Source of the DNA: Antechinus flavipes
Taxonomy: Eukaryota
Length of the DNA stretch: 64,000 nt
Direction: 5' to 3'
Assembly (NCBI RefSeq): GCF_016432865.1
Contig: NC_067400.1
Location: 615,970,001-616,034,000 of the forward strand
Part shown: positions 16,401 through 56,157 of the stretch, one piece after another
Position numbering within the stretch: the stretch's first letter is position 1
Layout of the letters: each line of letters opens with the position of its first letter
Notes under the pieces: generated by a model
The model's database searches: none
What the model was told of the DNA's origin: nothing
Seen by the model: the letters and a program-made list of their open reading frames with translations, nothing else
Position numbers and translations under genes: made by a program

Positions 16401-17745
16401 CGCTCCGGCTCCGGCGTCGGCGCTCTCCAGGCCTTGGTAGTCAGATTCTCCGGTGACGCCCTAGTGGGGGTCCCGCCGAGGGCCGACGCCCCGACCCGTG
16501 CCCAGCCTTAACCTGCAGGCCTGTGAGCCAGGGTCTTCCCTCCATCCCTAAAATCCCCCAGGGAACCACGAGACAGACAACATGAACCAAATCTACGGCT
16601 TTGAGGGGGAGGTGAAGGCCAAATACACAGCCCAGATGTTTGAGCTTTTCAGCGAGGTATTTGAGTGGCTGCCCCTGGCCCAGTGTATCAACGGCAAGGT
16701 GCTGGTAAGCCTTTGTGGGGCAGGGGCAAGGGGCAGCCCTGGGGGAGCGGGGGAGGGAGGGGGGTGCCCTCACCACGCCTCCTGCCTCCCCAGATCATGC
16801 ACGGGGGGCTCTTCAGCGAGGACGGGGTCACCCTGGACGACATCCGGAAGATCGAGCGGAATCGGCAGCCCCCCGACTCCGGTGAGCTCCGCGGGCCCCG
16901 GGCACATCCCTGCCGTGGAGGGGGCTTGGGGCAGGGGGCGCCCGGGCCCGAGCCCACTAACTGCCCCTCTCTCTTCCCCGTCCACTCGCAGGCCCCATGT
17001 GCGATTTGCTCTGGTCCGATCCACAGCCCCAGGTCAGTGAGCGCTCGCCTCGCGCAGGGTCCCCGGGGGGCGGGGGGGGCCGGGGCCGGGGGCCGGATCT
17101 GAGGCTTCTCTCCTCCAGAACGGGCGCTCGGTCAGCAAGCGAGGCGTGAGCTGCCAGTTTGGACCGGACGTCACCAAGGCCTTCCTGGAGGAGAATCGGC
17201 TGGACTACATCATCCGCAGCCACGAGGTGAAGCCTGAGGGCTACGAGGTGGCCCACGACGGCAAATGCGTCACTGTGTTCTCCGCCCCCAACTACTGGTG
17301 AGGAAGCCGGGGCCCCCACCCCCACCCCGACCCCTCTGGGGCTGCCCCCGGGCCCTGCTGCCCCCACCCCCGCCGGGCCACCCCCTGGGCTCCCCTGGCC
17401 CTGCCCGCCTGACGGGCTGTTCCTTCCCGCAGCGACCAGATGGGCAATAAGGCCTCCTACATCCACCTCCGAGGCTCCGACCTGCGGCCCCAGTTCCACC
17501 AGTTCACAGCAGTGGTGAGTCCCGGGTGCCCTGAGCTCGTAGCTCTGGGTGAAGGCTGGGCAGGGGCCCGAGAGGGGTCAGGGGCCGGGGAGCAAAGGTC
17601 GGGGAGCACGGGCCGGGGGTCAGGTAAAGCGTGGGCAGGAGCCCGGAGGAGCCGGCCCGACAGGACTTCTGGTCTCCTGCAGCCTCATCCCAACGTCAAG
17701 CCCATGGCCTACGCCAACACATTGCTGCAGCTGGGGATGATGTGA
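1193..17745 (+). CDS. PPP5C: Serine/threonine protein phosphatase 5 (3 TPR + PPP catalytic domain), 13 coding exons, 499 aa, intact
   Basis: Exons join in frame: 1193-1313, 4674-4915, 7436-7583, 14866-14987, 15127-15192, 15519-15617, 16070-16175, 16562-16704, 16794-16881, 16992-17032, 17119-17297, 17433-17514, 17683-17745 (sum 1500 nt). All introns are GT-AG. The translation starts MAMAEGER, contains the GDTHG, GDFVDRG and RGNHE metallophosphatase motifs, and ends [20 protein letters not shown], as in mammalian PP5. Confidence 0.98.
1400..2560. repeat. Degenerate minisatellite in PPP5C intron 1 (alternating ~30-37 bp subunits)
   Basis: Recurring CTGCTGCCAGATAGTGAGCCAT(A/G)GGGAAATG and GTTGCCACATAGTGAGCCATATGAAGA. 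This explains the repetitive [15 protein letters not shown]-type ORFs. Confidence 0.85.
4343..4615. repeat. 43-44 bp G-rich minisatellite, about 6.3 copies, just upstream of exon 2
   Basis: Unit CTGGGGACCCTCGGGCCCGTCCCGGAGGCCTGGGGGGGAGGGG starts at 4343, 4386, 4429, 4473, 4516, 4560, 4603. Confidence 0.95.
4674..4915 (+). CDS. PPP5C: PPP5C exon 2 (TPR1-3)
   Basis: ccatccag|GC AAG GAC TAC; [18 protein letters not shown]...ALRDYET; donor ACG|GTGAGC; 242 nt. Confidence 0.97.
7436..7583 (+). CDS. PPP5C: PPP5C exon 3
   Basis: tgtgcag|[20 protein letters not shown]...LDIESM; donor GA|GTGAGT; 148 nt. Confidence 0.97.
9980..11427 (-). mobile_element. 5'-truncated young L1 (ORF2 C-terminus + 3'UTR), antisense in intron 3
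   Basis: ORF 10384-11391 is the L1 ORF2 end ([24 protein letters not shown]). The T-run tail is at 9980, and a 13-bp TSD AAATTTGTCAAAT lies at 9967-9979 and 11424-11436. Confidence 0.95.
11466..11816 (-). pseudogene. RPL36: Processed pseudogene of 60S ribosomal protein L36
   Basis: Intronless [10 protein letters not shown]...[23 protein letters not shown]...KVSKDK*...[20 protein letters not shown]. It has two in-frame stops, a frameshift at a C/A run and a lost stop codon (TCA). ATG at 11777. Confidence 0.93.
11890..13400 (-). mobile_element. Old decayed L1 (ORF1-region) fragment hosting the 12360-12975 insertion
   Basis: T-rich sequence resembling the antisense of marsupial L1 ORF1 (ttttggaatat..., gagcttcaaac...); boundaries approximate. 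Confidence 0.45.
12360..12975 (-). mobile_element. 5'-truncated young L1 3' end
   Basis: ORF2 tail 12718-13092 + 3'UTR; perfect 15-bp TSD TGGGACAGTTTTCTT at 12345-12359 and 12976-12990. Confidence 0.95.
14866..14987 (+). CDS. PPP5C: PPP5C exon 4
   Basis: [40 protein letters not shown]; cccag| and |GTGAGC; 122 nt. Confidence 0.97.
15127..15192 (+). CDS. PPP5C: PPP5C exon 5
   Basis: [22 protein letters not shown]; 66 nt; ctcag| and |GTGCCT. Confidence 0.96.
15519..15617 (+). CDS. PPP5C: PPP5C exon 6
   Basis: [33 protein letters not shown]; followed by the U12-type donor GTATCCTTT; 99 nt. Confidence 0.97.
15618..16069 (+). other. U12-type (minor spliceosome) GT-AG intron 6 of PPP5C
   Basis: The 5' splice site GTATCCTTT matches the U12 consensus. 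A branch-like TTTTCCTGAGC lies at 16046-16056, with its A (16054) 15 nt before the AG, and there is no long polypyrimidine tract. Confidence 0.9.
15660..15925. repeat. C-rich low-complexity tandem repeat within U12 intron 6
   Basis: About 7 units of CCCC(T/G)GCACGGC + long C runs. Confidence 0.85.
16070..16175 (+). CDS. PPP5C: PPP5C exon 7
   Basis: [35 protein letters not shown]; donor G|GTAAGC; 106 nt. Confidence 0.97.
16562..16704 (+). CDS. PPP5C: PPP5C exon 8
   Basis: [21 protein letters not shown]...CINGKVL; 143 nt. Confidence 0.97.
16794..16881 (+). CDS. PPP5C: PPP5C exon 9
   Basis: [29 protein letters not shown]; 88 nt. Confidence 0.97.
16992..17032 (+). CDS. PPP5C: PPP5C exon 10
   Basis: [13 protein letters not shown]; 41 nt. 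Confidence 0.96.
17119..17297 (+). CDS. PPP5C: PPP5C exon 11
   Basis: [38 protein letters not shown]...VFSAPNY; 179 nt. Confidence 0.97.
17433..17514 (+). CDS. PPP5C: PPP5C exon 12
   Basis: [27 protein letters not shown]; 82 nt. Confidence 0.97.
17683..17745 (+). CDS. PPP5C: PPP5C exon 13 (coding part, to TGA)
   Basis: [20 protein letters not shown]; 63 nt. Confidence 0.97.
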   Translation, partial: PHPNVKPMAYANTLLQLGMM

Positions 17746-18235
17746 GGGGGACGCAGGGGCCTGGGCGGAGGCTCCCCTGGAGCCGGGCGCCGGCCCAGCC
17801 CTCGCTCCCAGCAGGAGGCTGGCCTGGCCCAGAAGTTGGAGACCCGAGGAGTTCCACCTGCTTTTACTTTGTAAACTTTGTATTTATTCCCCCACTTTGG
17901 TTCAAGGGGTCTGCATCCCCAGGACGATGGGCATTTGTGGGCTGGGGCTTCTGGGGGCTTGCTGCCCCAGGGCATTCTGGGAGGAGGCGGCGAGAGCTGG
18001 GGGAGGGAGAAGGGCAGGGCCAGGGGAGCCGCTCCCACCCCCTTCGTTTGCATGGCTCTGCCCCCTTTCCACCCATCACTGAAGCAATAGGCCCCATGGA
18101 GGGGCTGGGGGTCAGGGGTCCTCTCTGCTCAATCCACCAAGGGCTCTTGGTCTACTGGAGCCCCCCAGGCAGGGGCCGAGAGCCAGGCCCGCCCAGAGCC
18201 CTCCCCGCCCCACCCAAGCTATTTTACTGTCTGTA

Positions 18236-18520: not shown

Positions 18521-18918
18521 TCCGGCCTCCTCCTGGGCCTTGATGGCTGCTGCCCCCACCCACTCTCCCCCAGCCAACAACAGGTCGGGGGACGGCCCCT
18601 GCCCTATGTGAGGGCCGCCGGCCCTCCCAGCCCAGGCTGGGTCAGAGCAGCCGTTGGGGCCAGAAGCTGAGAGGAGGAGTCTCACAGGGCTCCGAGGGGA
18701 TGGAGGAGACCCGGTCCCCTAGTCCAGGGGGTGATTTCTGGGTTCCATGGGACTGATCTAATCTCACAGATAGTGGTTCCCTAGTGACACCATTGGCTTA
18801 TGCTCCAGGCCGGGGCCTCCCTCAGGTTCGTGAGAGGCAGAGAAGGCAAAGGAAGGGGGCGGCTGGGAGCTCAGGCTCTGGGAGCCAAGGGGGGATTCAG
18901 GCCTCCTTCGGTCAGGTT

Positions 18919-20057
18919 CCCGGGGCCGGGGGGCTCCGAGTCAGAGCTAGGGACCACGGGCTCCGGGGGGCCAGGGGGTTCCGAGTCAGAGTTAGGGACC
19001 ACGGGCTCCCAGGGGGCTCCGAGTCAGAGCTAGGGACCACGGGCTCCCGGGGGGCTCTGAGTCAGAGCTAGGGACCACGGGCTCCCGGGGGCTCCGAGTC
19101 AGAGCTAGGGACCACGGGCTCCCGGGGGCTCCGAGTCAGAGTTAGGGACCACGGGCTCCCGGGGGCTCCGAGTCAGAGTTAGGGACCACGGGCTCCCGGG
19201 GGCTCCGAGTCAGAGTTAGGGACCACGGTCAGAGTTAGGGACCACGGGCTCCCGGGGGCTCCGAGTCAGAGCTAGGGACCACGGTCAGAGTTAGGGACCA
19301 CGGGCTCCCGGGGGCTCCGAGTCAGAGCTAGGGACCACGGTCAGAGTTAGGGACCACGGGCTCCCGGGGGCTCCGAGTCAGAGTTAGGGACCACGGTCAG
19401 AGTTAGGGACCACGGGCTCCCGGGGCCGGGGGGCTCCGACTCAGAGCTAGGGACCACGGGCTCCCGGGGGCTCCGAGTCAGAGTTAGGGACCACGGTCAG
19501 AGTTAGGGACCACGGGCTCCCGGGGGCTCCGAGTCAGAGCTAGGGACCACGGTCAGAGTTAGGGACCACGGGCTCCCGGGGGCTCCGAGTCAGAGCTAGG
19601 GACCACGGTCAGAGTTAGGGACCACGGGCTCCCGGGGGCTCCGAGTCAGAGTTAGGGACCACGGTCAGAGTTAGGGACCACGGGCTCCCGGGGCCGGGGG
19701 GCTCCGACTCAGAGCTAGGGACCACGGGCTCCCGGGGGCTCCGAGTCAGAGTTAGGGACCACGGGCTCCCGGGGGGCTCCGACTCAGAGCTAGGGACCAC
19801 GGGCTCCCGGGGGCTCCGAGTCAGAGTTAGGGACCACGGGCTCCCTGGGGCTCCGAGTCAGAGTTAGGGACCACGGTCAGAGTTAGGGACCACGGGCTCC
19901 CGGGGCCGGGGGGCTCCGACTCAGAGCTAGGGACCACGGGCTCCCGGGGGCTCCGAGTCAGAGTTAGGGACCACGGGCTCCCGGGGGGCTCCGACTCAGA
20001 GCTAGGGACCACGGGCTCCCGGGGGCTCCGAGTCAGAGCTAGGGACCACGGGCTCCC
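18919..20057. repeat. GC-rich minisatellite, 37-bp unit with 19-bp and longer variant units
   Basis: GAGTCAGAG(C/T)TAGGGACCACGGGCTCCCGGGGGCTCC interspersed with GGTCAGAGTTAGGGACCAC; about 34 core units by manual count. Confidence 0.97.
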
Positions 20058-22538
20058 TTCTCCCGCCCTGGGGTGGCGGGCCCGGCCTCCTGCACTTCTC
20101 CACAGAAGAAAGCTGCTGGGCCCCAGGCCAGGAGACAAGACTGGGAAGGAGACGGTGGAGGATTTGGGCTTCGGCCCCTGCCCCAGACCTCCAGAAAACG
20201 GCCGGGAGCACTACGGGGGCCCCCGGACGGCCCTTCTCGGCCCCTGCTTCTGCCGGAGGGGAGGCTCCCGCTGCGCCCGCTCTGCCGGGTCCCTCGGAGG
20301 GTGGGAACAGGTCCCGGCTGACGGGAGCCGGGCAGACTCTGGGCCCCGGGTCCATGGGGGGCCGGTCCCTGCTGCGCTCGGGGCTCCGGGCCTGGACTGG
20401 CAGCGGGCCTGTGGCCCAGAGGCCGGCTCCAGTCCCTGTTGTGCCGGGCTCCCGGACGGGGTGGGGGGGGGCACCTCGGGCATCCTGCCTCCCCTGCCCC
20501 CGGCACTGATGCGGACGGTTGCCTGGTCTGGGTGCAGCGATTGGCAGGAAGAGCTCTGGACCATCCGGACGCCTCCCCCCGAGGCCCGGGCTAAGGTCCC
20601 CTCACTGGCTCTGGGCTTAAAAAAGCCTGTGGCCTTTCTACAACCGGGCCGCGAGCCTGAGTTCTGGGAGATGCAGCCGGGAGGGTGGGCTGCAGGGCAG
20701 AGAAGGGGCCTCCTGCCCCTGCGAGAGAGCGGCGAGGGGGGCTGCGGGGCCCGGGGGGGGCACCGTGTGGGCCTTCTGAGCCGGCCCCTCCCAGCGGCGG
20801 CTTCGTCTGGCAGGGAGTGACAGGAGCCCGGACAGCTGGGCCTTCGGGAACAGTGGGGGCCAGGGCCCTCGGGGGCAGGGCTCAGGGCTGCAGCAGGGAA
20901 TGCCCCCCCCCCCCACACACACGGAGGAGCCTGGGGGCAGGGCCGTGCCCCGGGGGGCCAGAGGGTGCCAGGGGCCTTGGGGGCAGGGCTGGGGGCTCCA
21001 GCAGGGAACGCCCCCCCACACACACACGGAGGAGCCTGGGGGCGGGGCCGTGCCCTGGGGCAGTGGTGAGTGGCCGGGGGCAGGGAGGGAAGCTGGCACT
21101 CGGCCCTTTGATTCGCCTTCAGAGGGGGAACGTGGCAGACCCGGCTCCTCCACCCCACGAGGCTCCGGCCCCACGGCCTCCCTGGAGAGGTCGGCGTTTC
21201 TGGCACCGCTGGGGCAGTGCGGGGCCTGGAGGCCGGGACAGAGGCGCCCACCCTGGCAGCTCCCCCTCCGCCTGCAGGGGGGACGGTCCTGGAACAGCAG
21301 TGGAGAGACCCACGCAGGCGCGCTGGGGATTGTGGGGCTGGGCCCAGCGAGGCTGCTCCGGGGGTCCCGCAGTGTCACCGCTGGCTCTCGGGGCTGTGGG
21401 CGCGGAGCTTCCCAAAGGAGAGCCCTGGGAGGGAGGACCCTGAGGCAGGCAGAGGGGATGCGGCTTGCTGCCGGCCCAGCTCCGGGGGTCCGGCCTGAGC
21501 GGGGGCTTCCGGCCTCCAGGCCCACGGGTGCCCGACAGCAGAGCCTGAAGGATGCCGAGCACAGGGAGCACACGGGGGGCCTATGGGGTCCGTGTTTTAC
21601 AAGTAGCTGCCAGGGGGGAAAGGAGCGCCCAGCAAAACCTTACCAGTGACCTGCGTTTTCCCCGGGCTCGGGCTGGCTCCAGCTCCCCATGACCAGGAAA
21701 CATTGAGGGCTTCCCAGGGCCCGGCATGTGCCTCCCCAAGCTGCCTGCGTCGAGCCCAGGGCTCCGGAGGGACCCCCCGCTGCCCCTCCCCGTGCCCCGG
21801 CCCTGCCATCTCCCTCCTCCCCCATAGTCCTTCAGGCTGTGGCAGTCATGGAGACCCTGTTCCCTCCCCCTCCTGCCGAAGGGCATCCCACAAAGGAGCG
21901 TCTTCCACTCCTCCCTCCCCGAGGCCCAGCAGTGACCCTCGGCCCGCCCGCTTCTCCTCCCACCCACCAGGCCCCGCCGCCCCTTTCCGAGCCGGGAGCT
22001 CGGGGCCATTGTCTCCCAGAGCTGCTGCCCCGCGCCCCTCTGCCCCTACAAGCTGCCGGGCACGGGCGCTCGCTTCGGGGGACCCAGGTCCGTCCAGAGA
22101 AGGGGCAGTGGGGGGTCCCACGGCCCTCAGCCTCTGGCTGACCCATCACGGCGTATCCGTCCCAAGAGCCGCGAGAACGCGCCGGGCGGTGGCTGCAATT
22201 AACGGTCACTGCTCAATCTCAGAAGCCCCCCTTGTACAGAGGGGAACGGGTCCAGGGAAGGGCCTTCATCCTGCCCACTTCTTGTCTCCCGTTTCTTCAC
22301 CCGTGAAAGACAAAGAGGTTGGGGTAGATGGCCATGATCAGAAACCCCGGGGCTTCGGTGCCCAAGGACGGCCTTTGCCTCTTTGTAGCTCAGCGCCTGG
22401 CACACAGTAGGTGCTTCACAAGTGTTTGCTGGATTGGACTGTTGAACTGCCAGCTCTATAATCCTCAAAGCCCGTGAACCCTGTGGAGCAGATCCCCATT
22501 GTACAGGTGAGGAAACTGAGGTCAGAGAAGTTAAATGT

Positions 22539-22905
22539 CCCCCTGGGGGTTCCAAGGGGCGCTCAGCTGAGATATCCCCTCCCCCTCCCCCTGGGGGTCC
22601 CAAGGGGAGCTCAGCTGAGATATCCCCTCCCCCTCCCCCTGGGGGCCCAAGGGAGCTCAGCTGAGATATCCCCTCCCCCTCCCCCCTGGGGGCCCCAAGG
22701 GGAGCTCAGCTGAGATATCCCCCCCTCCCCCTGGGGGCCCTAAGGGAGCTCAGCTGAGATATCCCCTCCCCCTCCCCCTGGGGGTCCCAAGGGAGCTCAG
22801 CTGAGATATCCCCTCCCCCTGGGGGTCCCAAGGGAGCTCAGCTGAGATATCCCCTCCCCCTCCCCCTGGGGGTTCCACGAGGCGCTCAGCTGAGATATCC
22901 CACCC
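22539..22905. repeat. Minisatellite A, 8 units of 41-49 bp
   Basis: CCCCTGGGGGTCCCAAGGGAGCTCAGCTGAGATATCCCCTCCCCCT; core at 22562, 22610, 22656, 22705, 22749, 22796, 22837, 22885. Confidence 0.95.
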
Positions 22906-23848
22906 TGAAGTGCCCTGTGGGAGACAGGATCCACTTGCAGACTCGGGCTCCCTGCCCGGGCCGAGTCTCTTGGGCAGAAGTGGCCGACGGGAGCATCCGG
23001 GAGCATGGAATGGTCTAGCCTGGGCCCAGGGAGCAGCGGCTCGGGCAGCCTCTGAGAACAGCGGCCTCCCTGGCTGGCCTCCAGCGCTCGCCCTGACGTC
23101 GGGCCAGGAGCCGGGACTCCCACGCCTTCCGGACCTAAGAATAGCTGGTTTCCAGCTGAGGAAACGCAGATGGGAGTTTAATGTGGCCGCTCACGTGCGC
23201 TCCGGGGAGGGGACGGCCTTAGGGAGAGGGAAGGGCGCCCCTTGTAGCTTGGTGGTTCATTCTCCAGCATTCACTCAGCGTCTGCTGGGGGCCCTTGTCC
23301 TTCTGTTTCACTCGTATCTGACTCCCCAGGAGCCCTTTGAGGGGTTTGGGGGACGGACGTACTGGAGGCCTTTGGCTTCTCCTCCAGCTCATTTTACAGA
23401 TGAGGAAACTGAGGCAAATGGGGTTAAGTGGCCGCCGGGGTCACGCAGCTAGAAAGTACTTGGGGCTGGATTTGAGCTCAGGTTTCCCTGGCTCCAGGCT
23501 CGGTGCTCTATCCCCTGCACAGCCCAGCTCTGCCGTACCCCAGGCGGGGGGCCGGGAAGCCAGAGAAACCCCCAACCGCCCCTGCCCTCAGGGAGCTTGC
23601 CCGCTTTGGGCCGAGATCTTGGTCTCTGCTGCCGAAAATACTTTGTCAGGATTGGGTCTTGGGGAGTTAGCGCTCGGAGGAGCCCAAGGGATTCTGGGAC
23701 CACGTCTCCTCTCAATGGGGTCTTCTGGAAGGCAGGGAGGAGAAGCTCCTTCCTGAGGTCCGCAGGCAGGGGATGTGGGGGGTGGGGGCCGCTGCTGCTC
23801 TGCCGCCTCCGACTGCTCTGCCCTCTCCAGCACAGGGAGACATCCGCT

Positions 23849-24425
23849 CCCTCCCCCGGGGTCCACAAGGGGAGCACAACTGAGCTATCTCACTCCCCTC
23901 CCCCGGGGTCCACAAGGGGAGAACAACTGAGCTATCTCATCCCCCCTCCCCCGGGGTCCACAAGGGGAGAACAACTGAGCTATCTCACCCCCCTCCCCCG
24001 GGGTCCACAAGGGGAGCACAACTGAGCTATCTCACCCCCCTCCCCCGGGGTCCACAAGGGGAGCACAACTGAGCTATCTCACCCCCCTCCTCCAGAGGTC
24101 ACCAGGGGAGCACAACTGAGCTATCTCATCCCCCCTCCCCCAGGGTCCACAAGGGGAGCACAATTGAGATAACTCATCCCCCTCCCCCAGGGTCCACAAG
24201 GGGAGCACAACTGAGCTATCTCACCCCCCTCCTCCGGAGGTCACCAGGGGAGCACAACTGAGCTATCTCACCCCCCTCCCCCGGGGTCCACAAGGGGAGC
24301 ACAACTGAGCTATCTCACCCACATATCCCTGGGGGTCACCAGGGGAGCTCAGGTGAGGTATCTCACCCCTGTTCCCCAGGAGTCACAAGCTATCTCACCC
24401 CCCTTCCCCCGGGGGTCACCAGGAG
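23849..24425. repeat. Minisatellite B, 10 units of 47-48 bp plus degenerate end units
   Basis: CCCCGGGGTCCACAAGGGGAGCACAACTGAGCTATCTCACCCCCCT; core at 23878, 23925, 23973 ... 24303. Confidence 0.95.
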
Positions 24426-25986
24426 AACTTGGCTGGGAAGAAGGGACTGCAGACCTGGGAGCTGGCTGGGTTTTTCTGCCCTGGACCCTTTTGCTATGGG
24501 GAACTCCCGAGTCTCTAGGGGGCGCCGTGGTGCATCGAACCCTGGACGAACGGATCTCCCCTAGTTCAAATCTGGCCTTCAGCGCATTGGATCGTCCCCA
24601 TTCGTAGATGAGCTGCGTGACCCTGTTTGCCTCAAAAACAAAACTAGAAATCCCACTGTTTTCCCTTTAATTTCCCTCCCGTGATTGTACCTCATTTTCC
24701 CCGTCAGTTTACACCGTGGATACTAAGAAATGCTACAAATCGGGCTGGTTTCATTGCTGTTACTGCTTGGACTTGAGAAAGGGGCCGCTCTCTGGGCCTC
24801 CTTCCCTACTTTGCTCCCCTCTAAGCCCTGGATGACCGGCTGTCCCCGACGCCACCCCCAGGTTCAGTTCGCTTCCCTTGGCCCCAGGGAGCCCCCCTTC
24901 ATTCCCGCCCCTCAGGCTCCGCTCGGTGAAGCTCTGTCCGTGCCTCTCCCCCAGCAGGCTGCCTCCTTCCTCGGTTTCCTTAAACAGCCCTCGTCTGGGA
25001 TGTGTGATCTTTGCAGGGAAATCCCAGCAATGTCTCTCTTACCATGGCCTTTGTCCCCCAGCGCCCGGCGCACAAGTGCTTCGTGAATATTTGCTGACCC
25101 TTGGGGGGCTTAATATTTACCTGTTCAACTGATCTGAGTGAGAGAGGAACCACCGAGCACTAACCATTGTCCCACCTGGCTGTCCCACAGCACAGGAGCC
25201 GGCCACCTCGGTAATGAATGAAGCTCGTTGGAAATGTCCTTGGGTTCGAAGGCAAGCTCCCATTTGGAAGAGACCCCGGAAGCTGTCAGCTGCTCGGAGG
25301 GGGCTCTCCTTCCCACTGATGCTGCTTCCTTTCTGGGCCACTTCCCCAGACCCACACACATCAGTCAGCCAGCTCCCTCCATGGTGTCCTTGATAAGTGC
25401 TCCTCCCTTCTTGGAGGAGCCCCCCCCACTCCCCGGGCGCCCACTTTGGGATGGTCTACTCGGCACCAAATCCGTGCCGACATGGAGCCGAAATCTGCTG
25501 CTTCCCGTTGCTCCAGTCAGAACCAGACGAATCCCTCTTCCGCCAAACGGCTCTTTCTGTGAGCCCTCTCTTCTTCGCATTGAGCACCCGGCTCTCTGTC
25601 TCTGTCCTCACGTGAGTGAAGGCCTTCCTTTTAAAATCCTCTAGGAGCCTCTGAATTCCTCTCTCCCCAGTAACCCCAAGTCAGTGAGTCCCACGACTCC
25701 GGGACTGGCTCCTTCGGCCCAATTTATCGTTCTTGTTTGTGGGTGAGGTTTGTGACCATCTCTCTGACCCCAACCGGGGCTTTCTGGGCAAACATAATCG
25801 GACGGCTCGTTGTTTCCTTCTCCAGTTCGTTTTACGGCTGAGGAAACAGAGGCAGACAGAGTTAAGTGACAGGTCACACAGCTAGTAAGGGTCAAATCAC
25901 CAGACGTGAACTCACGGGGATGTCTTCTTAGCTCCCAAAAACAAACCATGTTCCTAGACCAGAAAAATTTATGTGAGTATGTATGT

Positions 25987-41454: not shown

Positions 41455-42717
41455 ACAGTTTTTTGTTTCCATTTTCAATACCATGTGGGGTCAAGCATTC
41501 AGAATCCAAACTTGAATTTAATTTTCCAACTAGAATTCAAGGCTCCGACATATGGGACNNNNNNNNNNNNNNNNNNNNNNNNNNNNNNNNNNNNNNNNNN
41601 NNNNNNNNNNNNNNNNNNNNNNNNNNNNNNNNNNNNNNNNNNNNNNNNNNNNNNNNNNNNNNNNNNNNNNNNNNNNNNNNNNNNNNNNNNNNNNNNNNNN
41701 NNNNNNNNNNNNNNNNNNNNNNNNNNNGCTCCGTTTGACTTTAGATAAAACTCATAGTTGACAAGCAATGTAATAATAATTCTACCTTATAGTATGACTC
41801 AGGTATAATCAGGCAGGAAAACTTTCTGATCAAAAGCATTGGAAAACTGAGCCAGAAATTGCCCAACGTAAGCTTAAACCGAAAGTTGTTCTACAGGTTT
41901 CAGCCCAGACACAAGAACTCTGCTTGAAACAGTTCAGGATCCCATTCCTCTGAGTCGCTTGTGGCATTTCTCTTCAGTGGTGGCTTACTGGTTTAATGAG
42001 TCATCGTTGTCAAATGAGAGTGAATTATATCTGCTGTTTCTTCTTTCTTAAAGACATATTTTGCTAATAGTGACTAACAATTAGTAAAGAGATTTCTTGT
42101 TAAGTATTGAACTCATGAACTCTTGGAGGTTATACTCCCTGTAGGTCTGGATGCTTTTTAATCTCTATAATTTGAGTTAGAAACTATTTGTATTAAGATA
42201 AGGAAAAGTAGGATGGAGGACTGGAGAGAGAGTTGGCCAAAAAAAAAAAAATAAATAAATAAATAAATAAAAATTAAAAAAAAAAAAAAAAAGAAAGAGT
42301 TTCTGCCTTTCTAATGGAAGAAGACATATAAAAGGAGGCTGAATGAATATGTTTGACCTAGACATTCTCCTTAAAACTGTATTTCTGGGAGGAAGTAGAT
42401 AATCAGAGGCAGACTTTTTCCAAGTTACGACCCCAAAGATATACTGGCCCTTCTGAAAATCTTCCCTGCCGTCTTGGACTAGTAGGTATGTAAGAATATA
42501 TTCTCAAAGACCTGGGGACGATTTCTATAAAAATAATTAGCAAATATAATCCGAGTTCCTCATTCTACCTCTCACACAAGTGTGGAGCATTGCTCTCCAT
42601 CAGGAAAGAGAAAGTCCCATATGTCGGAGCCTTGAATTCTAGTTAGAAAAATAAATTCAAGTTTGGATTCTGAACACTTGACCCCACATGGTATTGAAAA
42701 TGGAAACAAAAAACTGT
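41455..42717. repeat. Inverted duplication, 104-bp visible arms (41455-41558 / 42614-42717), ~96% identical
   Basis: Reverse-complement match with 4 differences; the left arm runs into the N-gap at 41559. Confidence 0.88.
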
Positions 42718-43291
42718 TAAGTAAAACAGAGTCCTTATGAAGAAGCAAGTCCTTATGAAGAAGCATCTGTATAAAGATGGGCCAGAAGCCTCTAACCTCA
42801 GGCTGCCTCTTTCCTCCTTTCACTAGTGTTTACTCTAATTTACTCTAGTTATGCTAGTTTATTACCAGTAGACTTGGAACCAGAAATGACAGATGTGAAA
42901 GAGTGTAATTACTCATACTCCCTGCAGCTGTTTCTGCCTCTTTGCCCCCACTATTTTAAGAGTCATTGAAAACTAATATGCATAGTTTTGGGGAGAGGCT
43001 GTCATTTCTTGCTATAGTTGCTGGTTTACAATATCGTATAATAAAATTTTATTACTCATCTACCGTGTGGCAGATGCTCCGATAAATGATGAGGATATAA
43101 ATAAGAAAATGAAAGACTTCTAGTTTCAAAGAAGTTATAGTCTAATGGGAGAAGACAACATGAAAAAAGAAGGTGGAAAGGAGTAAATGGACACAGGGAA
43201 GAGCATGTTCTGTGGGGCTGGTTAAAATGTTAAGTCCAAATCCTGCCCTCCATAACAGAAGGCAATTGGGGGATTTTGCACTCTACCCTCC

Positions 43292-43482
43292 CAGGGGTCC
43301 TCAAACTTTTTAAACAGGGGGCCAGTTCACTGTCCCTCAGACTGTTGGAGGGCTAGACTCTAGTAAAAACAAAAACTTTGTTTTGTGGGCCTTTAAATAA
43401 AGAAACTTCATAGCCCTAGGTGAGGGGGATAAACGTCCTCAGCTGCTGCATCTGGCCTGCGGCCGTAGTTTGAGGACCCCTG
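43292..43482. mobile_element. Non-autonomous hAT-Charlie MITE (OposCharlie1/OC1-like), 191 bp
   Basis: Perfect 16-bp terminal inverted repeats CAGGGGTCCTCAAACT / AGTTTGAGGACCCCTG; no 8-bp TSD discernible. Confidence 0.85.
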
Positions 43483-45053
43483 CAATCAGACAGAAGACCG
43501 GGCTGAGGAAGATAGAAAAATGCTGAGTATCAAAAGCCAATTTATTAACTTGATGAGATCTACTCCAAAAGCAGTCATTTAGAAAGCATCTAGGATTTGA
43601 TTACTTGTCTTATCTCCAATAAGCTCCCCAGGTTTCCCCCAAGTAGTGGCTCTTTTGAGAAATGTGAAACTTACTGGAAAAAGAAGAAAAATTGTACTGA
43701 TTATTTATGGGCTATTGTTTTCCTTTATGTTATTTCAGCATCTTGGGGGAGGGCAATAAAAGCATCCTATACCTAATATACGTTTTTACCTTGAGAGGTT
43801 TTTTTACGGACGTTTTACCCATACCTATTGAGACCTAGATATGAGGTATATTTGAGTTACATTCTGAGATTTCCTAGGGGCAATTCTAAGTGGGCATAAA
43901 AAGGAACTAAAAGAATAATGATTTTTGGAGCAACTCCTCCGAGACTGAATCGGATCCAGGTAATTTAATGATCTAGAGAATCCTCTATGAATCTATGAGT
44001 TATATTAATATTAATATTTGTAATTTTCAGATGAGTTTGAATTGGTATAATAATTTCTGATAATTTTCTTTTTTTCACCTAAGAGTATTTTATTTTTTTC
44101 CAATTACATGTAAAGATAGTTTTCAACATTAATCTTTGTATGATTTTGAATTCCAAAGTTTCTTTCTACCTCCTTTCCATTCCCCTCCTCAAGAGGGGGA
44201 ATGTATACATTGTACACATACAATCATGTTAAACATATTTCCATATCAGTCATTTTGTGAAAGAAAAATCAGAAGAAAAGGAAAAAACCGCTAGAAAGAA
44301 GAAAGGTGAAAATAGCGTACTTCAATCTTCATTCAATCTCCATAGTTCTTTCTCTGGATGTGGATGACATTTTCTATGTCAAGTCTATTGGACTTGTTTT
44401 GTTTCACTGTATTTCTGAGAAGAGCCAAGTCTATAACAGTTGATCATCATACAACATTGCTATTACTGTGTAAAATGTTTTCCTGGTTCTGCTCCCTTCA
44501 CTCAGCATCAGTTCATGTTAGTCTTTCCAGGCTTTTCTGAAATCTACCCACTCATCATTTCTGATCATTTGTTTTAAAATTATGAACTTGACAAATATGA
44601 CTTTTTCCATATACAAAGAATAACAGAAAAAAAATTGTTTATAAAAATGTGAAACTATTATAGATAATACATTTTAAACAAGTTTTTACTCTAATGATTT
44701 ATCAGCTTATTCTCAAGGTTTGAGTTTTCTTTCTAAAATCTTTAGTAATTTCAGTCTGTTTTGCCTTTATTTTCTGCTATAACTCACTTCCTGGCTCCTT
44801 TTCCTCTGAATGTGGTTTCCTTAAAGAATGGATCTCAAAGCATCTCAGTTTCCTCCCATGATGTTCAATTCATGTTTCACCAGCCTAGACCTCTGCCCCA
44901 GTTGAATTCTGGGTTAGAATTGACTTCAGTTGAATATTGTGCTCTTTCCTTCAGAGTTAATGGAATGCTGTACAGACCCCGTTTTTCCATATATCACCCC
45001 CAAAACACAGTGTCCTATCCTGTTCCCTCAGTTCCTTAATTCTTTGGTAATCA

Positions 45054-47526
45054 CTAGCATTTCAGAGCTTTGTAACACTGGTGCCACAGAGTTGTGACCC
45101 CAACAGGGTTTTGCTCCTGAGGGGCTCTGGCTATTTGCCTCCACCATGGCAAATTTCCAAAGTCTAGATTCAGGCCCTCCATACAACTGGAAAGACGGAA
45201 GGTGGACCACAGTATAAGGGTGGGTTTTGTTGTAAGTCTGTAACTTGTCCTTGTGTGAGAGGTGGAAGAAGGATGCTGAGTCAGCAAGGGTTAGTATCAG
45301 TTCATAAACTTTTGGATTTTGTTTTTACCTTCTTTTAGATTCCAACTAAGGCTGCTTTACCTTTGGTACTTAATTTCTGTTTTGGAGAAGTTTGAGAAGT
45401 TGCGAGGATCAGAGAAAAAGTCGAGTCCTCCATCTTATTGATGTGATCCAGCAGAAATACATTTTTAAAAAAATATATTTTTAATATATCACCATAGTTT
45501 TTCCCCATATTCTTCCCTTCCCCCTCCCAGAGAACTGTCCAACATAACAAATAGCATCTTTAATATAATAAGTAATATTTTAATATAACAAATAGTAGTT
45601 TCAATTTAATAGCATTTTAATGATATCTTATTTTCTCCAACTACACATAAAAATACTTTTAATATTTGTTTTTATTTTGAATTCCTAATTCTCTCTTTCC
45701 CTCTTCTCCTCCTCTCCAAGGCAGTAAGTGATCTGATATAGGTTAAATATATACAGCCATGTAAAACACATTTCTGTAATAGTCATTTTGTGAAAAAAGA
45801 AAGAGTGAAAAATAGTATACTTCAGGATGCATTCAGACTCCATTGGTTCTTTCTCTTGAGGAGGATACCATTTTTCATCATAAGGTCTTTGGCATTGTTT
45901 TGAATGCTTGTATTGCTGGGAATAGCTAAGTCATTCACAGTTGATCATTGTATAGTATTTACTGTTATGTACAATGTTCTTCTGGTTCTGCCCTAATATA
46001 GTGCTAATTATATTACTTCATGTAATGCTAATACAAAATAGTATTTTTAATACTATTAATAAAAATATTATTAATACAAACACGTATTTTTGATATAAAA
46101 AAAGAAAAGGAAAAATCTGCACTAGCAATCATCACATTGGAAAAGTTCAAAACCTCCATGAAAGGATGTTAGGAGATTCCTCTAATATCTCTTCTTTCTA
46201 ATCATACTTAATCTATACTTTTATAGCATTCACTTTTGANNNNNNNNNNNNNNNNNNNNNNNNNNNNNNNNNNNNNNNNNNNNNNNNNNNNNNNNNNNNN
46301 NNNNNNNNNNNNNNNNNNNNNNNNNNNNNNNNNNNNNNNNNNNNNNNNNNNNNNNNNNNNNNNNNNNNNNNNNNNNNNNNNNNNNNNNNNNNNNNNNNNN
46401 NNNNNNNNNNNNNNNNNNNNNNNNNNNNNNNNNNNNNNNNNNNNNNNNNNNNNNNNNNNNNNNNNNNNNNNNNNNNNNNNNNNNNNNNNNNNNNNNNNNN
46501 NNNNNNNTCTCCTCTTTCTCCTTCTCTTCTTCCTTCTCCTCCTTTTCCTCTCCTCCTTCTTCTTCTTTTCTTCTTCTTCCTCCTCCTCTTCTCCTCTTCT
46601 TGGCATTACTATCACTCTCTCCCATAAGTCTTCTCCTTCCACCAATAAAAACACTATTTCATCACAAATAAGTTTAGTCAAATACAATAAATCCATATGT
46701 TGATTTGTCTGAACATGCATGTTTCATTCTTTATCCTTAGTCAAACGCACCAGTCGGCCAAGAGGTTGGAAATATGATTTATCTAATAATCTTCTCATTT
46801 TCTCTCCATTCCATATTCTCATATTTTGTTTTGGCAATTTGGTTTTCCTCTCTCTTTTGTCATTTTTAATTAGTCAACAGTTTCTCTATTTTATTGGTCC
46901 TTTCTTTTCAAAGATTTTATTTATCAAATCAATAAATCTATTTTCAGCTTTGTTTTATTTTTTATTTTCAAAATTTCTATTTTGTGCTTGTTTGAGAATT
47001 ATTAACTGATTTAATTGTATATGGTTTAGTTATTTCATCAATTAACATATTTTTTTCCCTTTTGTTGGGAGATATTTCCCCTAAGCATACTGCTTTAACT
47101 TCATCTTACATCTTTTTGTATACTACTTCATCATTATAATTTTCTTTAATATAGTTATTTGTTGTTTCCATGACATGTTCTTTGAATCATTCATTCTCTT
47201 TTTGAGCTTTTACATAGAAATATTTTTTAAAAGGGACAATTACAAATATGCAAACTTAATCCACTAACATGTGGCAGACATGGTCCTATCTCTCCCCTGC
47301 ACCACTTCAGTCTCTGGGAAATGGAAGGGGATTAAATTCATAGTTTAGCTCCTTTCCCATAGAACACAATTGCAGCTTCAAGTCCAACCCAATGTACCAC
47401 TAATCTGCAATTCTGGCTCCAAGATTGTCATAGAGAGAACTCCTGAGTCCCAAGGGATTACCTCTGGAACCTGAAACTGAGTAGGACAAGCAATCATAAA
47501 ACTAGAACAAACATCTCCAAGCCCAT
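45054..47526 (-). pseudogene. Putative decayed IGFL-like paralog (signal exon 47526-47462; main exon from 45249)
   Basis: MGLEMFVLVL*LLVLLSFRFQ ends at the phase-2 donor GAG|GTAATC. The acceptor ttccacctctcacacaag| then reads in the matching phase into PTLILW-x7-C, and a frameshift leads to TLEICHGG...QLCG. Confidence 0.3.
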
Positions 47527-53402: not shown

Positions 53403-53408
53403 TTTATT
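53403..53408 (-). terminator. AATAAA overlapping the stop codon of the IGFL-like gene
   Basis: AGA AAA TAA AGG reads AATAAA across the TAA. Confidence 0.45.
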
Positions 53409-54666
53409 TTCTTATATACATGTCGCAGTCCTCCCTCTCTGTCTTCTTCTTATTCTTCAGGATGACAAAGAACTTCTCATGGTCAAAGCAGCAACGCTGA
53501 GTATCTCTGTTGAAGATGAAGTAGCCGCTCCAGGACCTCTCAGGACTGGGATCCCAGCCACAGCACTGATGGGTTTGGGGGTTGTAAGTCATACTTCCAC
53601 AAACTCTCCACTTTTGGATGACCCACATAAACTTAAGGTCTGTGAGAGATAAAGGAGAGTCTTGTCAGCTCTCAGCTGGATCCAGAACTTCTAGTCTCCT
53701 CCTTCCCCTTTAGATTTTTCTAACTCTTCTCTCCCTTAAATCACCATGGAATAGAGAATGACAGAGCTGGGAAGGCCTTTAGAAACCATCTAGTTTGGTC
53801 CAGTCATTACACAAGTGGAGAAACTGAGGCACAAAGTCACTATGGATCCTGGTCCCTGGCCATCACTTCCCGCCATGACCCCAAACTCCTTACCACTAAT
53901 ATCACAGACCTTTGTCCTTGGAACTTCCCATAAGAGTCTCATTCTGAGGATCAGTCAGCTGTCCCTCTAAGAAAGATGAGAACAAGAGGCATCCAGCTAG
54001 AAGGGAAAGAGAGAGGAGTAAGTGCCAGGGAACGAGAGAGATCAGGGTTGGTTGTATCTCCGTTTTGTTGGAAGGAGCTCCTAGTAATTAAAAAGCAATT
54101 GTCTTACAATGCATACTAAGGAAAATGGACTGGATGAGGAGGTAATAAGACAGTCACTGAGATAATGTGGCTCTAGCAATTTTGCTGCTCTATTAACTAG
54201 GAGTCTTGCCTCTTTCTGTTCACCCTTAGGTGGCGTTACTTCTGCCCATAATGTTTGGGATCAACTTTCTACTAACTTGATTATAAAGTACTCTTCTTGG
54301 AACTAGTAATTCTTGATCTTTCCAAATGTCAGGATGGAGATGGGGCGGGGAGAGATGAAGAAGAGGGAGAGAAGTTAGATGGGGAGCGAGGAGGGAGACA
54401 AAAAAAGAGAGAGATCGACAGAGACAGAGACACACACACAGAGATACACAGAAAAATAGACAGGCAGAAAGAGAGAGAGAAAGATACAGAGAGAAAGAGA
54501 GAGACAGAGACAGACAGACAGACAGACAGACAGAAAAAGAGACAAACAGACAGGAACAGGGAAACAAACACACAGAGAAAGAGAGAGACAGAGACAGAGA
54601 GATATACACAGAGAGATATACAGAAAATAGGCAGAAATAGAGAGAGAAAGACACAGAGTGAGAGAT

Positions 54667-54703
<37 letters not shown>

Positions 54704-56059
54704 CAGAGAGATATACAGAAAATAGACAGGCAGAAAGAGAGAGAAAGACACAGAGAAAAAGAGAGAGACAGAGACAGAGAGGTACACACAGAGAGATATA
54801 CAGAAAATAGACAGGCAGAAAGAGAGAGAGACAGACAGAGAGAGAGAGACAGACAAACAGAAATAGGGAGACACACACACATAGAAAGAGAGACAGAGAC
54901 AGAGACACGCACAGAGAGATATACAGAAAATAGACAGGCAGAAANNNNNNNNNNNNNNNNNNNNNNNNNNNNNNNNNNNNNNNNNNNNNNNNNNNNNNNN
55001 NNNNNNNNNNNNNNNNNNNNNNNNNNNNNNNNNNNNNNNNNNNNNNNNNNNNNNNNNNNNNNNNNNNNNNNNNNNNNNNNNNNNNNNNNNNNNNNNNNNN
55101 NNNNNNNNNNNNNNNNNNNNNNNNNNNNNNNNNNNNNNNNNNNNNNNNNNNNNNNNNNNNNNNNNNNNNNNNNNNNNNNNNAGGTGTGTGGTGCCATACA
55201 CCTTCCTCTTTTCTACAAGAAGATAAGAAGAAGGATGCTCTCAGGGAGGTTAGCAGTGGCAGTGAACATAGAAAGTTCAGAGGTGCAGTGAGGTCCTTCC
55301 TCCTCCTTCTCCTCCTGCCCCCAGCCTGTCCCAATAACTTTCTTCACTGAATTGTATCAGTAATACGAGGCTCAGCTTCTCCAAAGATCATAAAGGATCT
55401 CAAGGACCACATAGTTCAATCCTCTCCTTTTATAGATGAGGCAGCTGAAACTCAAAGAGGCTTGGCCAAGGCCGTATTGGTCGTGTGCAGCAGATCTGAG
55501 ATTCATAAGTTCATAGAATCACAGCCTTCAAGCCAGAAGAGAACTCAGGGGTCAGCTCAGCAACTTCTCACTTTTACCAATATGGAAGCTGATGCCTTTA
55601 GAAGCTAAGGATGTGTCCCAGCTCAAGGAGAACCTTTGGCTCTCAACCCAGCATTCTTTCCAGCACCAGCTTCCTCCTGCCTAGCCCCCCACAGCCCTGC
55701 CTCTTGAGCCCCAAGCCCCAGAACCACCCAGAGACTTGCCTTCTGCTTTTCTCTTCCAAATGCTGCCCCACCCTGCCCCTGTGGAAAGTACCACAAGCAA
55801 ACACCAGAAAGTCATTTTCTCCTGCACATCCCCTTCATCCAGATCCCCAAGACCCCAAGTAAGACATTCTGGATGCCCCAGTGAACTGCAAAATGGATCA
55901 TGTTTCCCACTACCTAACACCTCCCCAAGCCATCTGGAAGTAGCTAAAGAACCATGCTGCCCCCGTATCCCAGACTCCCTTAATTTGCCAAGACCGAGGA
56001 AGCCCAGGTGTAGGGCCCCACCGGCCAGGTTTACCCAGGAAGATGAATTGAAGAGCCAT
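53404..56059 (-). CDS. IGF-like family (IGFL)-type secreted Cys-rich protein, 115 aa; coding exons 56059-56035, 53996-53910, 53639-53404
   Basis: 25+87+236 = 348 nt, phases 1/1. Translation: MALQFIFLAGCLLFSSFLEGQLTDPQNETLMGSSKDKDLKFMWVIQKWRVCGSMTYNPQTHQCCGWDPSPERSWSGYFIFNRDTQRCCFDHEKFFVILKNKKKTEREDCDMYIRK. It has a signal peptide, CGxxxYNPxxxxCC, a second CC, FFVILK and a terminal C. Strong acceptors: ctctctttcccttctag and ctcctttatctctcacag. The exon-2 donor AAG|GTCTGT is weak. Confidence 0.7.
54385..54944. repeat. (GA)n/(GACA)n complex repeat with ~60-bp higher-order units, in intron 1 of the IGFL-like gene
   Basis: Recurring GAGACAGAGAGATATACAGAAAATAGACAGGCAGAAAGAGAGAG; runs into an N-gap. 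Confidence 0.92.
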
Positions 56060-56149
56060 GGAACTGGAAAGAAACTCCACTTCAGACTGTAGACACCTTG
56101 GGTTTGGGACCAGGTCTCAGCATTCTGCCCTCATCACCTTGAGCAATAC

Positions 56150-56157
56150 TTTTTATA
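56150..56157 (-). promoter_or_regulatory. TATA box of the IGFL-like gene
   Basis: CTATAAAAAG on the minus strand, ~98 nt upstream of the ATG (ttccATGG). Confidence 0.65.

What the first reader, a model, noticed from the sequence alone, without database searches (positions are those of the whole stretch)
53893..53996. Ancestral-type exon-2 donor appears destroyed (GT>AT), with an in-frame cryptic donor that adds a glycosylation sequon
As I recall, human IGFL exon 2 is 54 nt, phase 1-1. Exactly 54 nt into this exon (after 53943) the sequence reads CAG A|ATGAGA, a canonical GTGAGA donor with a +1 G>A change. A weak donor (AAG|GTCTGT, 53909) lies 33 nt further on. It keeps the frame and inserts about 11 residues, NETLMGSSKDK, including an N-E-T sequon. 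A stronger donor (GTG|GTAAGG, 16 nt further) would give a stop after about 39 aa. The gene is therefore either rescued by exon extension or in early pseudogenisation.
Basis: partly seen in the sequence, partly recalled or inferred. Interest (0 to 1): 0.7.

Follow-up and report, generated by a model that had tools for sequence, protein, structure and literature searches.

The report
Lost splice donor in IGFL-like gene
A small secreted-protein gene of a marsupial has lost the usual splice signal after its signal-peptide exon while staying otherwise intact; sequence alone cannot tell whether a weak nearby signal rescues it or the gene is starting to die.

Summary
On the minus strand, a 54-nt phase 1-1 exon (53996-53943) is followed by ATGAGA, not GT. 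An in-frame AAG|GTCTGT lies 33 nt further, an in-frame TGA 6 nt after that, and GTG|GTAAGG lies 49 nt from the old site.

Relatives support the 'ancestral donor' reading. Exon 2 is exactly 54 nt with a GT donor in Dromiciops IGFL2, and in homologues of this 6-cysteine gene in camel, a vespertilionid bat and one unnamed laurasiatherian. The alignment puts their GTGAG on the window's ATGAG. Exon 1, the exon-2 acceptor, the branch point, the last exon with all six cysteines, and the poly(A) signal are intact.

The frame-saving donor scores weaker than the out-of-frame one on two rough measures. In-frame GTs before the first stop also occur in four of the five relatives' introns checked. A phyllostomid bat, however, carries a 72-nt exon 2, so this region tolerates extra length.

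I lean to recent loss or reduction of function (0.45) over rescue (0.3). This is an ordinary kind of event.

The parts
56151..56157 (-). TATAAAA box about 95 nt upstream of the start codon
   Evidence: Read directly. Its function is inferred.
56082..56123 (-). 13-codon upstream ORF (MLRPGPKPKVSTV, then stop) ahead of the main ATG
   Evidence: I first mistook this ATG for the start codon; its in-frame donor (CTG|GTCCCA) is very poor.
56035..56059 (-). Exon 1 coding part: ATG plus 25 nt (MALQFIFL plus 1 base), phase 1, donor TGG|GTAAAC (GT at 56034-56033)
   Evidence: It aligns without gaps to Dromiciops IGFL2 exon 1 (ATG and TGG|GTAA donor in register, 25 nt). Phyllostomus exon 1 also has 25 coding nt.
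53997..56034 (-). Intron 1, holding a CT-rich simple repeat (about 54350-54944) and an N run (54945-55181) that was left untouched
53943..53996 (-). Exon 2 in its family-type extent: 54 nt, phase 1-1, signal-peptide core (A)GCLLFSSFLEGQLTDPQ
   Evidence: The acceptor and length align with camel, L002, Cnephaeus and Dromiciops IGFL2. The peptide resembles the phyllostomid bat signal peptide (tblastn E 0.018 in a small search).
53937..53942 (-). ATGAGA at the family donor position, where relatives have GTGAGC, GTGAGT or GTAAGG. The donor is lost, and position -1 (53943) is A instead of G.
   Evidence: U1 duplex -2.6 kcal/mol against -8.7 to -12.6 for relatives' exon-2 donors.
53910..53942 (-). 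33-nt possible exon extension encoding NETLMGSSKDK. The Asn codon AAT contains the changed base.
53904..53912 (-). Weak in-frame donor AAG|GTCTGT (GT at 53909-53908)
   Evidence: U1 duplex -6.2 kcal/mol, rough PWM score 1.6
53902..53904 (-). In-frame TGA, reached if splicing occurs downstream of 53910
53888..53896 (-). Stronger donor GTG|GTAAGG (GT at 53893-53892), out of frame for the signal-peptide ORF; gives a 39-aa product
   Evidence: U1 duplex -8.5 kcal/mol, rough PWM score 4.4
53664..53668 (-). Likely branch point CTGAC, 26 nt upstream of the last exon
   Evidence: Read; function inferred from the consensus
53404..53639 (-). Last exon: phase-1 acceptor cacag|AC, 77 codons carrying the C..CC..CC..C domain, stop TAA at 53406-53404 overlapping AATAAA (53408-53403)

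Best explanation
The stretch belongs to a three-coding-exon gene for a small secreted, cysteine-rich protein. The protein is related to the IGFL family and to uncharacterised 6-cysteine proteins of laurasiatherian mammals.

In this marsupial genome the family's usual donor, 54 nt into the signal-peptide exon, has been lost by substitution: AG|GT has become GA|AT in register. Everything else needed for expression is still intact, so the loss is probably recent on an evolutionary scale.

Three outcomes are inferred from splice-site rules and are not shown:
- Most transcripts would use the stronger GTAAGG donor 49 nt downstream, which gives a 39-aa product after an in-frame TGA. That stop is too close to the last junction to trigger nonsense-mediated decay.
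- Some transcripts would skip exon 2. This keeps the frame but removes the signal-peptide core.
- Only a minority would use the weak GTCTGT donor at +33, which would give a 115-aa secreted protein with 11 extra residues.

The copy is therefore most likely disabled or hypomorphic, at the start of pseudogenisation, and not cleanly rescued.
For: Donor loss and position.

The 54-nt exon 2 with a GT donor is the usual family state:
- Dromiciops IGFL2, L003:11780-11833, G|GTAAGG
- camel, L001:9967-10020, AAG|GTGAGC
- L002:31-84, AAG|GTGAGT
- Cnephaeus, L005:2700-2753, AAG|GTGAGC

The rest of the gene is intact:
- Exon 1 is 25 nt in phase 1 and aligns with Dromiciops IGFL2 exon 1.
- The last-exon acceptor sits 13 codons before the first Cys, as in L002.
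- The window keeps 21 of the 32 positions that are at least 85% conserved among 16 eutherian homologues, including all six Cys.

Donor strengths: site b scores -6.2 kcal/mol and PWM 1.6; site c scores -8.5 kcal/mol and PWM 4.4. Site c also lies nearer the acceptor. Both properties favour a donor when two compete closely (established knowledge from competing 5' splice-site studies, recalled).

In-frame GTs before the first stop occur in four of the five relatives' introns checked, so their presence here is not a sign of selection.

No protein matching this gene is on record for any marsupial.
Against:
- The splice scores are crude. The PWM frequencies are recalled from memory, and U1 pairing ignores enhancers and silencers.
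- Exon 1's own donor (-6.5 kcal/mol) is no stronger than site b, yet it is presumably used or was used.
- The gene shows no second lesion.
- A phyllostomid bat homologue has a 72-nt exon 2 with no GT at +54, so in-frame lengthening has been tolerated in this family.
Confidence: 0.45

Rival explanations
1. Rescue by exon extension. The weak donor AAG|GTCTGT at +33 is the working donor, possibly for a long time in this lineage. The gene then makes a 115-aa secreted protein with an 11-residue insert (NETLMGSSKDK, carrying an N-glycosylation sequon) between the signal peptide and the cysteine domain.
For: - The frame stays open and the junction codon works.
- Every other part of the gene is intact.
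- Site b (-6.2 kcal/mol) is as good as the exon-1 donor (-6.5).
- The insert would lie in the N-terminal tail, outside the cysteine core.
- Phyllostomus and Glossophaga homologues carry 6 extra residues at the same place, from a 72-nt exon 2.
Against: - A stronger donor 16 nt downstream should compete.
- In-frame cryptic GTs of similar strength occur in the unselected introns of relatives.
- The sequon's Asn is a by-product of the same base change.
- No transcript or protein record exists.
Confidence: 0.3
2. The A at 53942 is not fixed. It is either an assembly or base-call error, or one allele of a polymorphism, and the species normally has the GT donor.
For: Only one assembly was seen, and the rest of the gene is intact. 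This is what a very young or spurious change would look like.
Against: Position -1 (53943) also differs from the relatives, A against G, so at least two changes separate this site from the family consensus. Nothing points to poor local assembly; the nearest N run is 1 kb away.
Confidence: 0.1
3. Exon 2 is skipped as the main outcome. This gives an in-frame protein (exon 1 joined to the last exon) that lacks the signal-peptide core and stays inside the cell.
For: Exon 2 is symmetric (phase 1-1), and the exon 1 to last exon junction codon is GAC, in frame. Exon skipping is a common result of +1 donor mutations (established knowledge).
Against: Two usable GT sites lie within 50 nt, which usually favours cryptic-site use over skipping. 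A cysteine-rich domain in the cytosol has no obvious role.
Confidence: 0.05

Closest known systems
IGFL family (Pfam PF14653), e.g. IGFL2 of Dromiciops gliroides (XP_043847004) and IGFL3 of Notamacropus eugenii
   Same: - Three coding exons with phases 1-1.
- Exon 1 has 25 coding nt.
- Exon 2 is a 54-nt signal-peptide exon.
- The last exon carries CG..YNPQ..CC and RCC motifs.
- Profile-profile probability is 97.9%, E 3e-13.
   Different: - It has six rather than nine cysteines in the mature part.
- The Pfam IGFL score is 11.7 bits against a cut-off of 25.
- The exon-2 donor is AT here.
Uncharacterised 6-cysteine proteins of laurasiatherian mammals (Camelus ferus EPY84977, Myotis myotis A0A7J7SBZ9, Cnephaeus nilssonii QTO34_010255, Phyllostomus discolor HJG60_009034, and LOC-type models in grey seal and Pipistrellus)
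   Same: - They share the C..CC..CC..C pattern and the motifs WR.CG, QRCC, FFVI and EDC.
- Identity is 37-48%, with a best whole-library E of 1e-7.
- They have the same 54-nt exon 2 and the same acceptor position for the cysteine exon.
   Different: - The window keeps a 10-12-residue segment (GWDPSPERSW) that the eutherian proteins lack and canonical IGFLs have.
- The eutherian genes appear to continue into a further coding exon, whereas this one stops with TAA/AATAAA.
- The camel gene lies beside OPA3, while this one lies about 36 kb downstream of PPP5C.
Cryptic 5' splice-site activation or exon skipping after a +1 G>A donor change (textbook class of splicing mutation)
   Same: The GT is lost at the ancestral site, and GT sites within 50 nt could take over.
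   Different: The outcome here is only predicted; no transcript was seen.

Membership tests
IGFL (Pfam PF14653) | Scores above the Pfam gathering threshold | tested here: not met
   11.7 bits, E 0.28, against a cut-off of 25. The eutherian 6-Cys homologues score nothing. Dromiciops IGFL2 and wallaby IGFL3 score 48 and 43 bits.
IGFL (Pfam PF14653) | Demonstrable homology to annotated IGFL proteins | tested here: met
   Three tests agree: phmmer E 2e-4 to Dromiciops IGFL2 in a 1.8-billion-protein library; tblastn E 1e-9 on the L003 locus alone; hhalign 97.9%, E 3e-13.
IGFL (Pfam PF14653) | Cysteine pattern (nine in the marsupial members seen here; eleven in human members by recollection), including two CC pairs | tested here: not met
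   both CC pairs are kept, but three single cysteines are absent, leaving six.
IGFL (Pfam PF14653) | Gene structure: short exon 1, 54-nt phase 1-1 signal-peptide exon, one large cysteine exon | tested here: met
   The structure is met apart from the lost exon-2 donor.
IGFL (Pfam PF14653) | Secreted ligand of IGFLR1 | not testable with these tools
   Only a hydrophobic N-terminus (MALQFIFL-A-GCLLFSSFL) can be inferred.
Laurasiatherian uncharacterised 6-Cys IGFL-like proteins | Six cysteines as C..CC..CC..C with WR.CG, QRCC and EDC motifs | tested here: met
Laurasiatherian uncharacterised 6-Cys IGFL-like proteins | Orthology (shared position in the genome, tree placement) | tested here: inconclusive
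   The camel gene lies next to OPA3, while the window gene lies downstream of PPP5C. No outgroup was available for a rooted tree.
Cryptic-donor rescue of a splice mutation | Transcripts spliced at the cryptic in-frame donor | not testable with these tools
Young unitary pseudogene | A disabling lesion | tested here: met
   The canonical donor is lost.
Young unitary pseudogene | Further lesions or relaxed constraint | tested here: not met
   There is no stop or frameshift in any exon, and 21 of 32 conserved positions are kept.

The most novel reading that the evidence does not exclude
The donor loss was followed by stable use of the +33 donor in dasyurid marsupials. This would give a lineage-specific, N-glycosylated 11-residue tail on an ancient and still uncharacterised IGFL-like secreted protein. 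It would be a second, independent in-frame lengthening of the same exon, after the 72-nt exon 2 of phyllostomid bats.
Probability: 0.25. Interest if true: 0.5.

Novelty: new member of a known kind. Interest (0 to 1): 0.3.

Why it matters
In itself this is an ordinary event: a splice donor lost in a small, fast-evolving gene.

It has some value as a marker. It dates either a very recent gene loss or a splice-site shift in a gene family whose biology is barely known, and it gives a simple prediction to test by counting three junctions. The wider context is more interesting than the donor itself. The gene belongs to a 6-cysteine IGFL-like group that is present in both marsupials and laurasiatherian mammals and is annotated only as 'hypothetical' or 'uncharacterized'. 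That group is the subject of a separate finding.

Tried and rejected
- **Marsupial orthologues.** The word search with the last exon found nothing. The whole-library HMMER search and the alignment search found only eutherian homologues plus Dromiciops IGFL2. The wallaby IGFL3 locus returned no DNA. An exact look-up of the 50-aa ORF over the extension found nothing. PPP5C is too far away (about 36 kb) for a 10-kb flank to reach.
- **Paralogues in the window.** tblastn and a CG..Y.P..CC / CC..CC motif scan found no second IGFL-like exon. The one weak hit, at 43320-43373, looks to me like part of an interspersed repeat rather than a paralogue; this was read by eye, not tested.
- **Exon 1.** I first considered ATG 56123 (donor CTG|GTCCCA) and ATG 54249 (donor GAA|GTAACG). 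Both were rejected as poor donors. My scan missed the real candidate because of its score threshold. ATG 56059 was then found by eye and confirmed.
- **U12-type or AT-AC splicing of the ATGAGA site.** Rejected. The motif is not ATATCC-like and the intron ends in AG.
- **The ATG made by the G>A change.** It opens an ORF that is in frame with the GTAAGG donor and the last exon. I rejected this as a likely product because it has no signal peptide, lies behind a 39-codon ORF, and has roughly a 15% chance of arising by coincidence.

Full report
**The observation**

Read on the minus strand, a polypyrimidine tract and AG precede an exon that starts at 53996.
- Exactly 54 nt later the sequence is CAGA|ATGAGA, with AT at 53942-53941.
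- AAG|GTCTGT follows 33 nt further on (GT at 53909-53908).
- GTG|GTAAGG follows 49 nt from the old site (GT at 53893-53892).

Translation in phase 1 gives GCLLFSSFLEGQLTDPQ for the 54-nt exon and NETLMGSSKDK for the 33-nt stretch. If reading continues past 53910, it gives G, L and TGA (53904-53902).

**The gene**

The last exon starts at 53639 behind cacag, with a CTGAC branch point 26 nt upstream. It runs for 77 codons to a TAA that overlaps AATAAA.

Exon 1 took some finding. The ATG at 56123, near the TATA box, only opens a 13-codon upstream ORF, and its in-frame donor is very poor. The ATG at 56059 is followed by 25 coding nt (MALQFIFL plus one base) and TGG|GTAAAC. It aligns without gaps to exon 1 of Dromiciops IGFL2, with the ATG and donor in register and also 25 nt.

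The model therefore has exon 1 in phase 1, exon 2 in phase 1-1, and a last exon whose acceptor is in phase 1. I never joined the exons into one sequence for any search. Each piece was searched by reference, so no search or fold of the joined protein was made.

**What family it is**

- Pfam gives only a sub-threshold IGFL hit: 11.7 bits, E 0.28.
- The word search was blank.
- The whole-library HMMER search found short proteins with the same six-cysteine pattern. One is from Camelus ferus (hypothetical protein EPY84977); the others are unnamed ORFs on two contigs from sequencing-run and ENA assemblies. It also found IGFL2 of the marsupial Dromiciops gliroides.
- An alignment search added homologues from five bat species, the arctic fox and the grey seal, all named 'hypothetical' or 'uncharacterized'.
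- A profile of the 6-Cys group matches a profile of marsupial IGFL2/IGFL3 with 97.9% probability, E 3e-13.
- The window's protein keeps 21 of the 32 positions that are at least 85% conserved among 16 eutherian homologues, including all six cysteines.

It is therefore IGFL-like, but it does not meet Pfam's membership score and it lacks three of the family's cysteines.

On context, PPP5C exons lie on the plus strand at 4.8-17.7 kb. The camel homologue lies next to OPA3. By my recollection, in human both of these genes and the IGFL cluster lie in 19q13.32; I did not check this.

**Is the AT an ex-donor?**

Exon 2 is exactly 54 nt, phase 1-1, with a GT donor in four relatives:

| Gene | Coordinates | Donor |
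|---|---|---|
| Dromiciops IGFL2 | L003:11780-11833 | G\|GTAAGG |
| Camel homologue | L001:9967-10020 | AAG\|GTGAGC |
| L002 contig | L002:31-84 | AAG\|GTGAGT |
| Cnephaeus nilssonii | L005:2700-2753 | AAG\|GTGAGC |

The Myotis and wallaby proteins also have 18 residues for this exon. In alignments A1 and A5 the acceptors line up, and the window's AGA|ATGAG lines up with AAG|GTGAG. The ancestral-type donor claim is therefore supported. One addition is that position -1 has also changed.

**What happens to splicing?**

This could not be observed. 

In silico results:

| Site | U1 pairing (kcal/mol) | Rough PWM score |
|---|---|---|
| Mutated site (ATGAGA) | -2.6 | not applicable (no GT) |
| In-frame GTCTGT | -6.2 | 1.6 |
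| Out-of-frame GTAAGG | -8.5 | 4.4 |
| Relatives' exon-2 donors | -8.7 to -12.6 | 5.3 to 8.2 |

The PWM frequencies are from memory. The stronger site is also the one nearer the acceptor. Together these predict that the non-productive site wins, or that the symmetric exon is skipped, which removes the signal-peptide core.

As a chance control, I read the introns of five relatives through in frame. Four of them contain in-frame GTs before the first stop, with pairing energies down to -5.9. The Dromiciops IGFL2 intron has none. An in-frame GT here is therefore not evidence of selection.

Two things point the other way. The exon-1 donor is no stronger than GTCTGT (-6.5). Phyllostomus discolor has a 72-nt exon 2 with no GT at +54 and a good donor 18 nt further on (L004:3377-3448), and Glossophaga shares the six extra residues. 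Extra length at this point has therefore been tolerated once.

**Verdict**

The donor loss is real and is the only lesion in an otherwise intact gene.
- I put 0.45 on a recently disabled or hypomorphic copy.
- I put 0.3 on a working +33 extension.
- I put 0.1 on an error or a segregating allele.
- The remainder goes to exon skipping or other outcomes.

This is a new example of a well-known kind of event.

**Housekeeping**

- No N run was filled or looked up. The flank was kept below the run at 54945.
- No contig that I took for human was fetched. I took L002 (from run SRR28250547) as non-human for three reasons: it carries an L1 3' end of what I recognise, from memory, as the laurasiatherian type; its protein is closest to camel and bat proteins; and it occurs on very few contigs.
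- Notes from other agents say the genome is a dasyurid. I only saw that its repeats match Dromiciops repeats at 70-90%.

Noticed in passing
window 53894-53942 (minus) plus the last exon: The ATG created by the G>A change opens an ORF (MRLLWEVPRTKVCDIS...) that ends in phase 1 at the strong GTAAGG donor and is in frame with the last exon. It has no signal peptide and lies behind a 39-codon ORF, so it is probably a coincidence.
   Followed up: partly
L004:3377-3500 (Phyllostomus discolor): Exon 2 is 72 nt here. The sequence just after its donor translates as EVLVVVWGRWR, which resembles the start of the cysteine exon of other species (EVLVVRKEKW). A second gene call (141 aa) covers 3001-3913. 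This may be a partial duplication or fusion.
   Followed up: no
L001, L005, and proteins P0030 and P0036: The eutherian 6-Cys genes seem to have a GT donor after the cysteine exon (e.g. ...TIG|GTACGT in L002) and a further coding exon (IHPNSKGPQEICNEG in Myotis and Cnephaeus). The marsupial copy ends with a stop and AATAAA. The whole group is annotated only as hypothetical or uncharacterized.
   Followed up: partly
window 4800-17750 (+): PPP5C exons: TPR motifs at 4847 and 7460; phosphatase motifs GDTHGQ at 15540, GDFVDRG at 16079 and SAPNY at 17281; C-terminal end near 17740.
   Followed up: partly
window 18750-24600: A GC-rich region downstream of PPP5C. Its ORF translations repeat short units (e.g. 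GSESELGTTGS..., AISPPSPGVHKGSTTELSHPP...), which suggests minisatellite arrays.
   Followed up: no
window 54350-55181: A CT-rich simple repeat of about 600 nt in intron 1, running into an N run (54945-55181).
   Followed up: no
window 41455-47526: Another note calls this stretch relics of IGFL-like paralogues. My tblastn and cysteine-motif scans found no IGFL-like exon there. The one weak hit, at 43320-43373, looked to me like part of an interspersed repeat (read by eye).
   Followed up: partly
window 56082-56123 (minus): A 13-codon upstream ORF lies between the TATA box and the main ATG of the IGFL-like gene.
   Followed up: no
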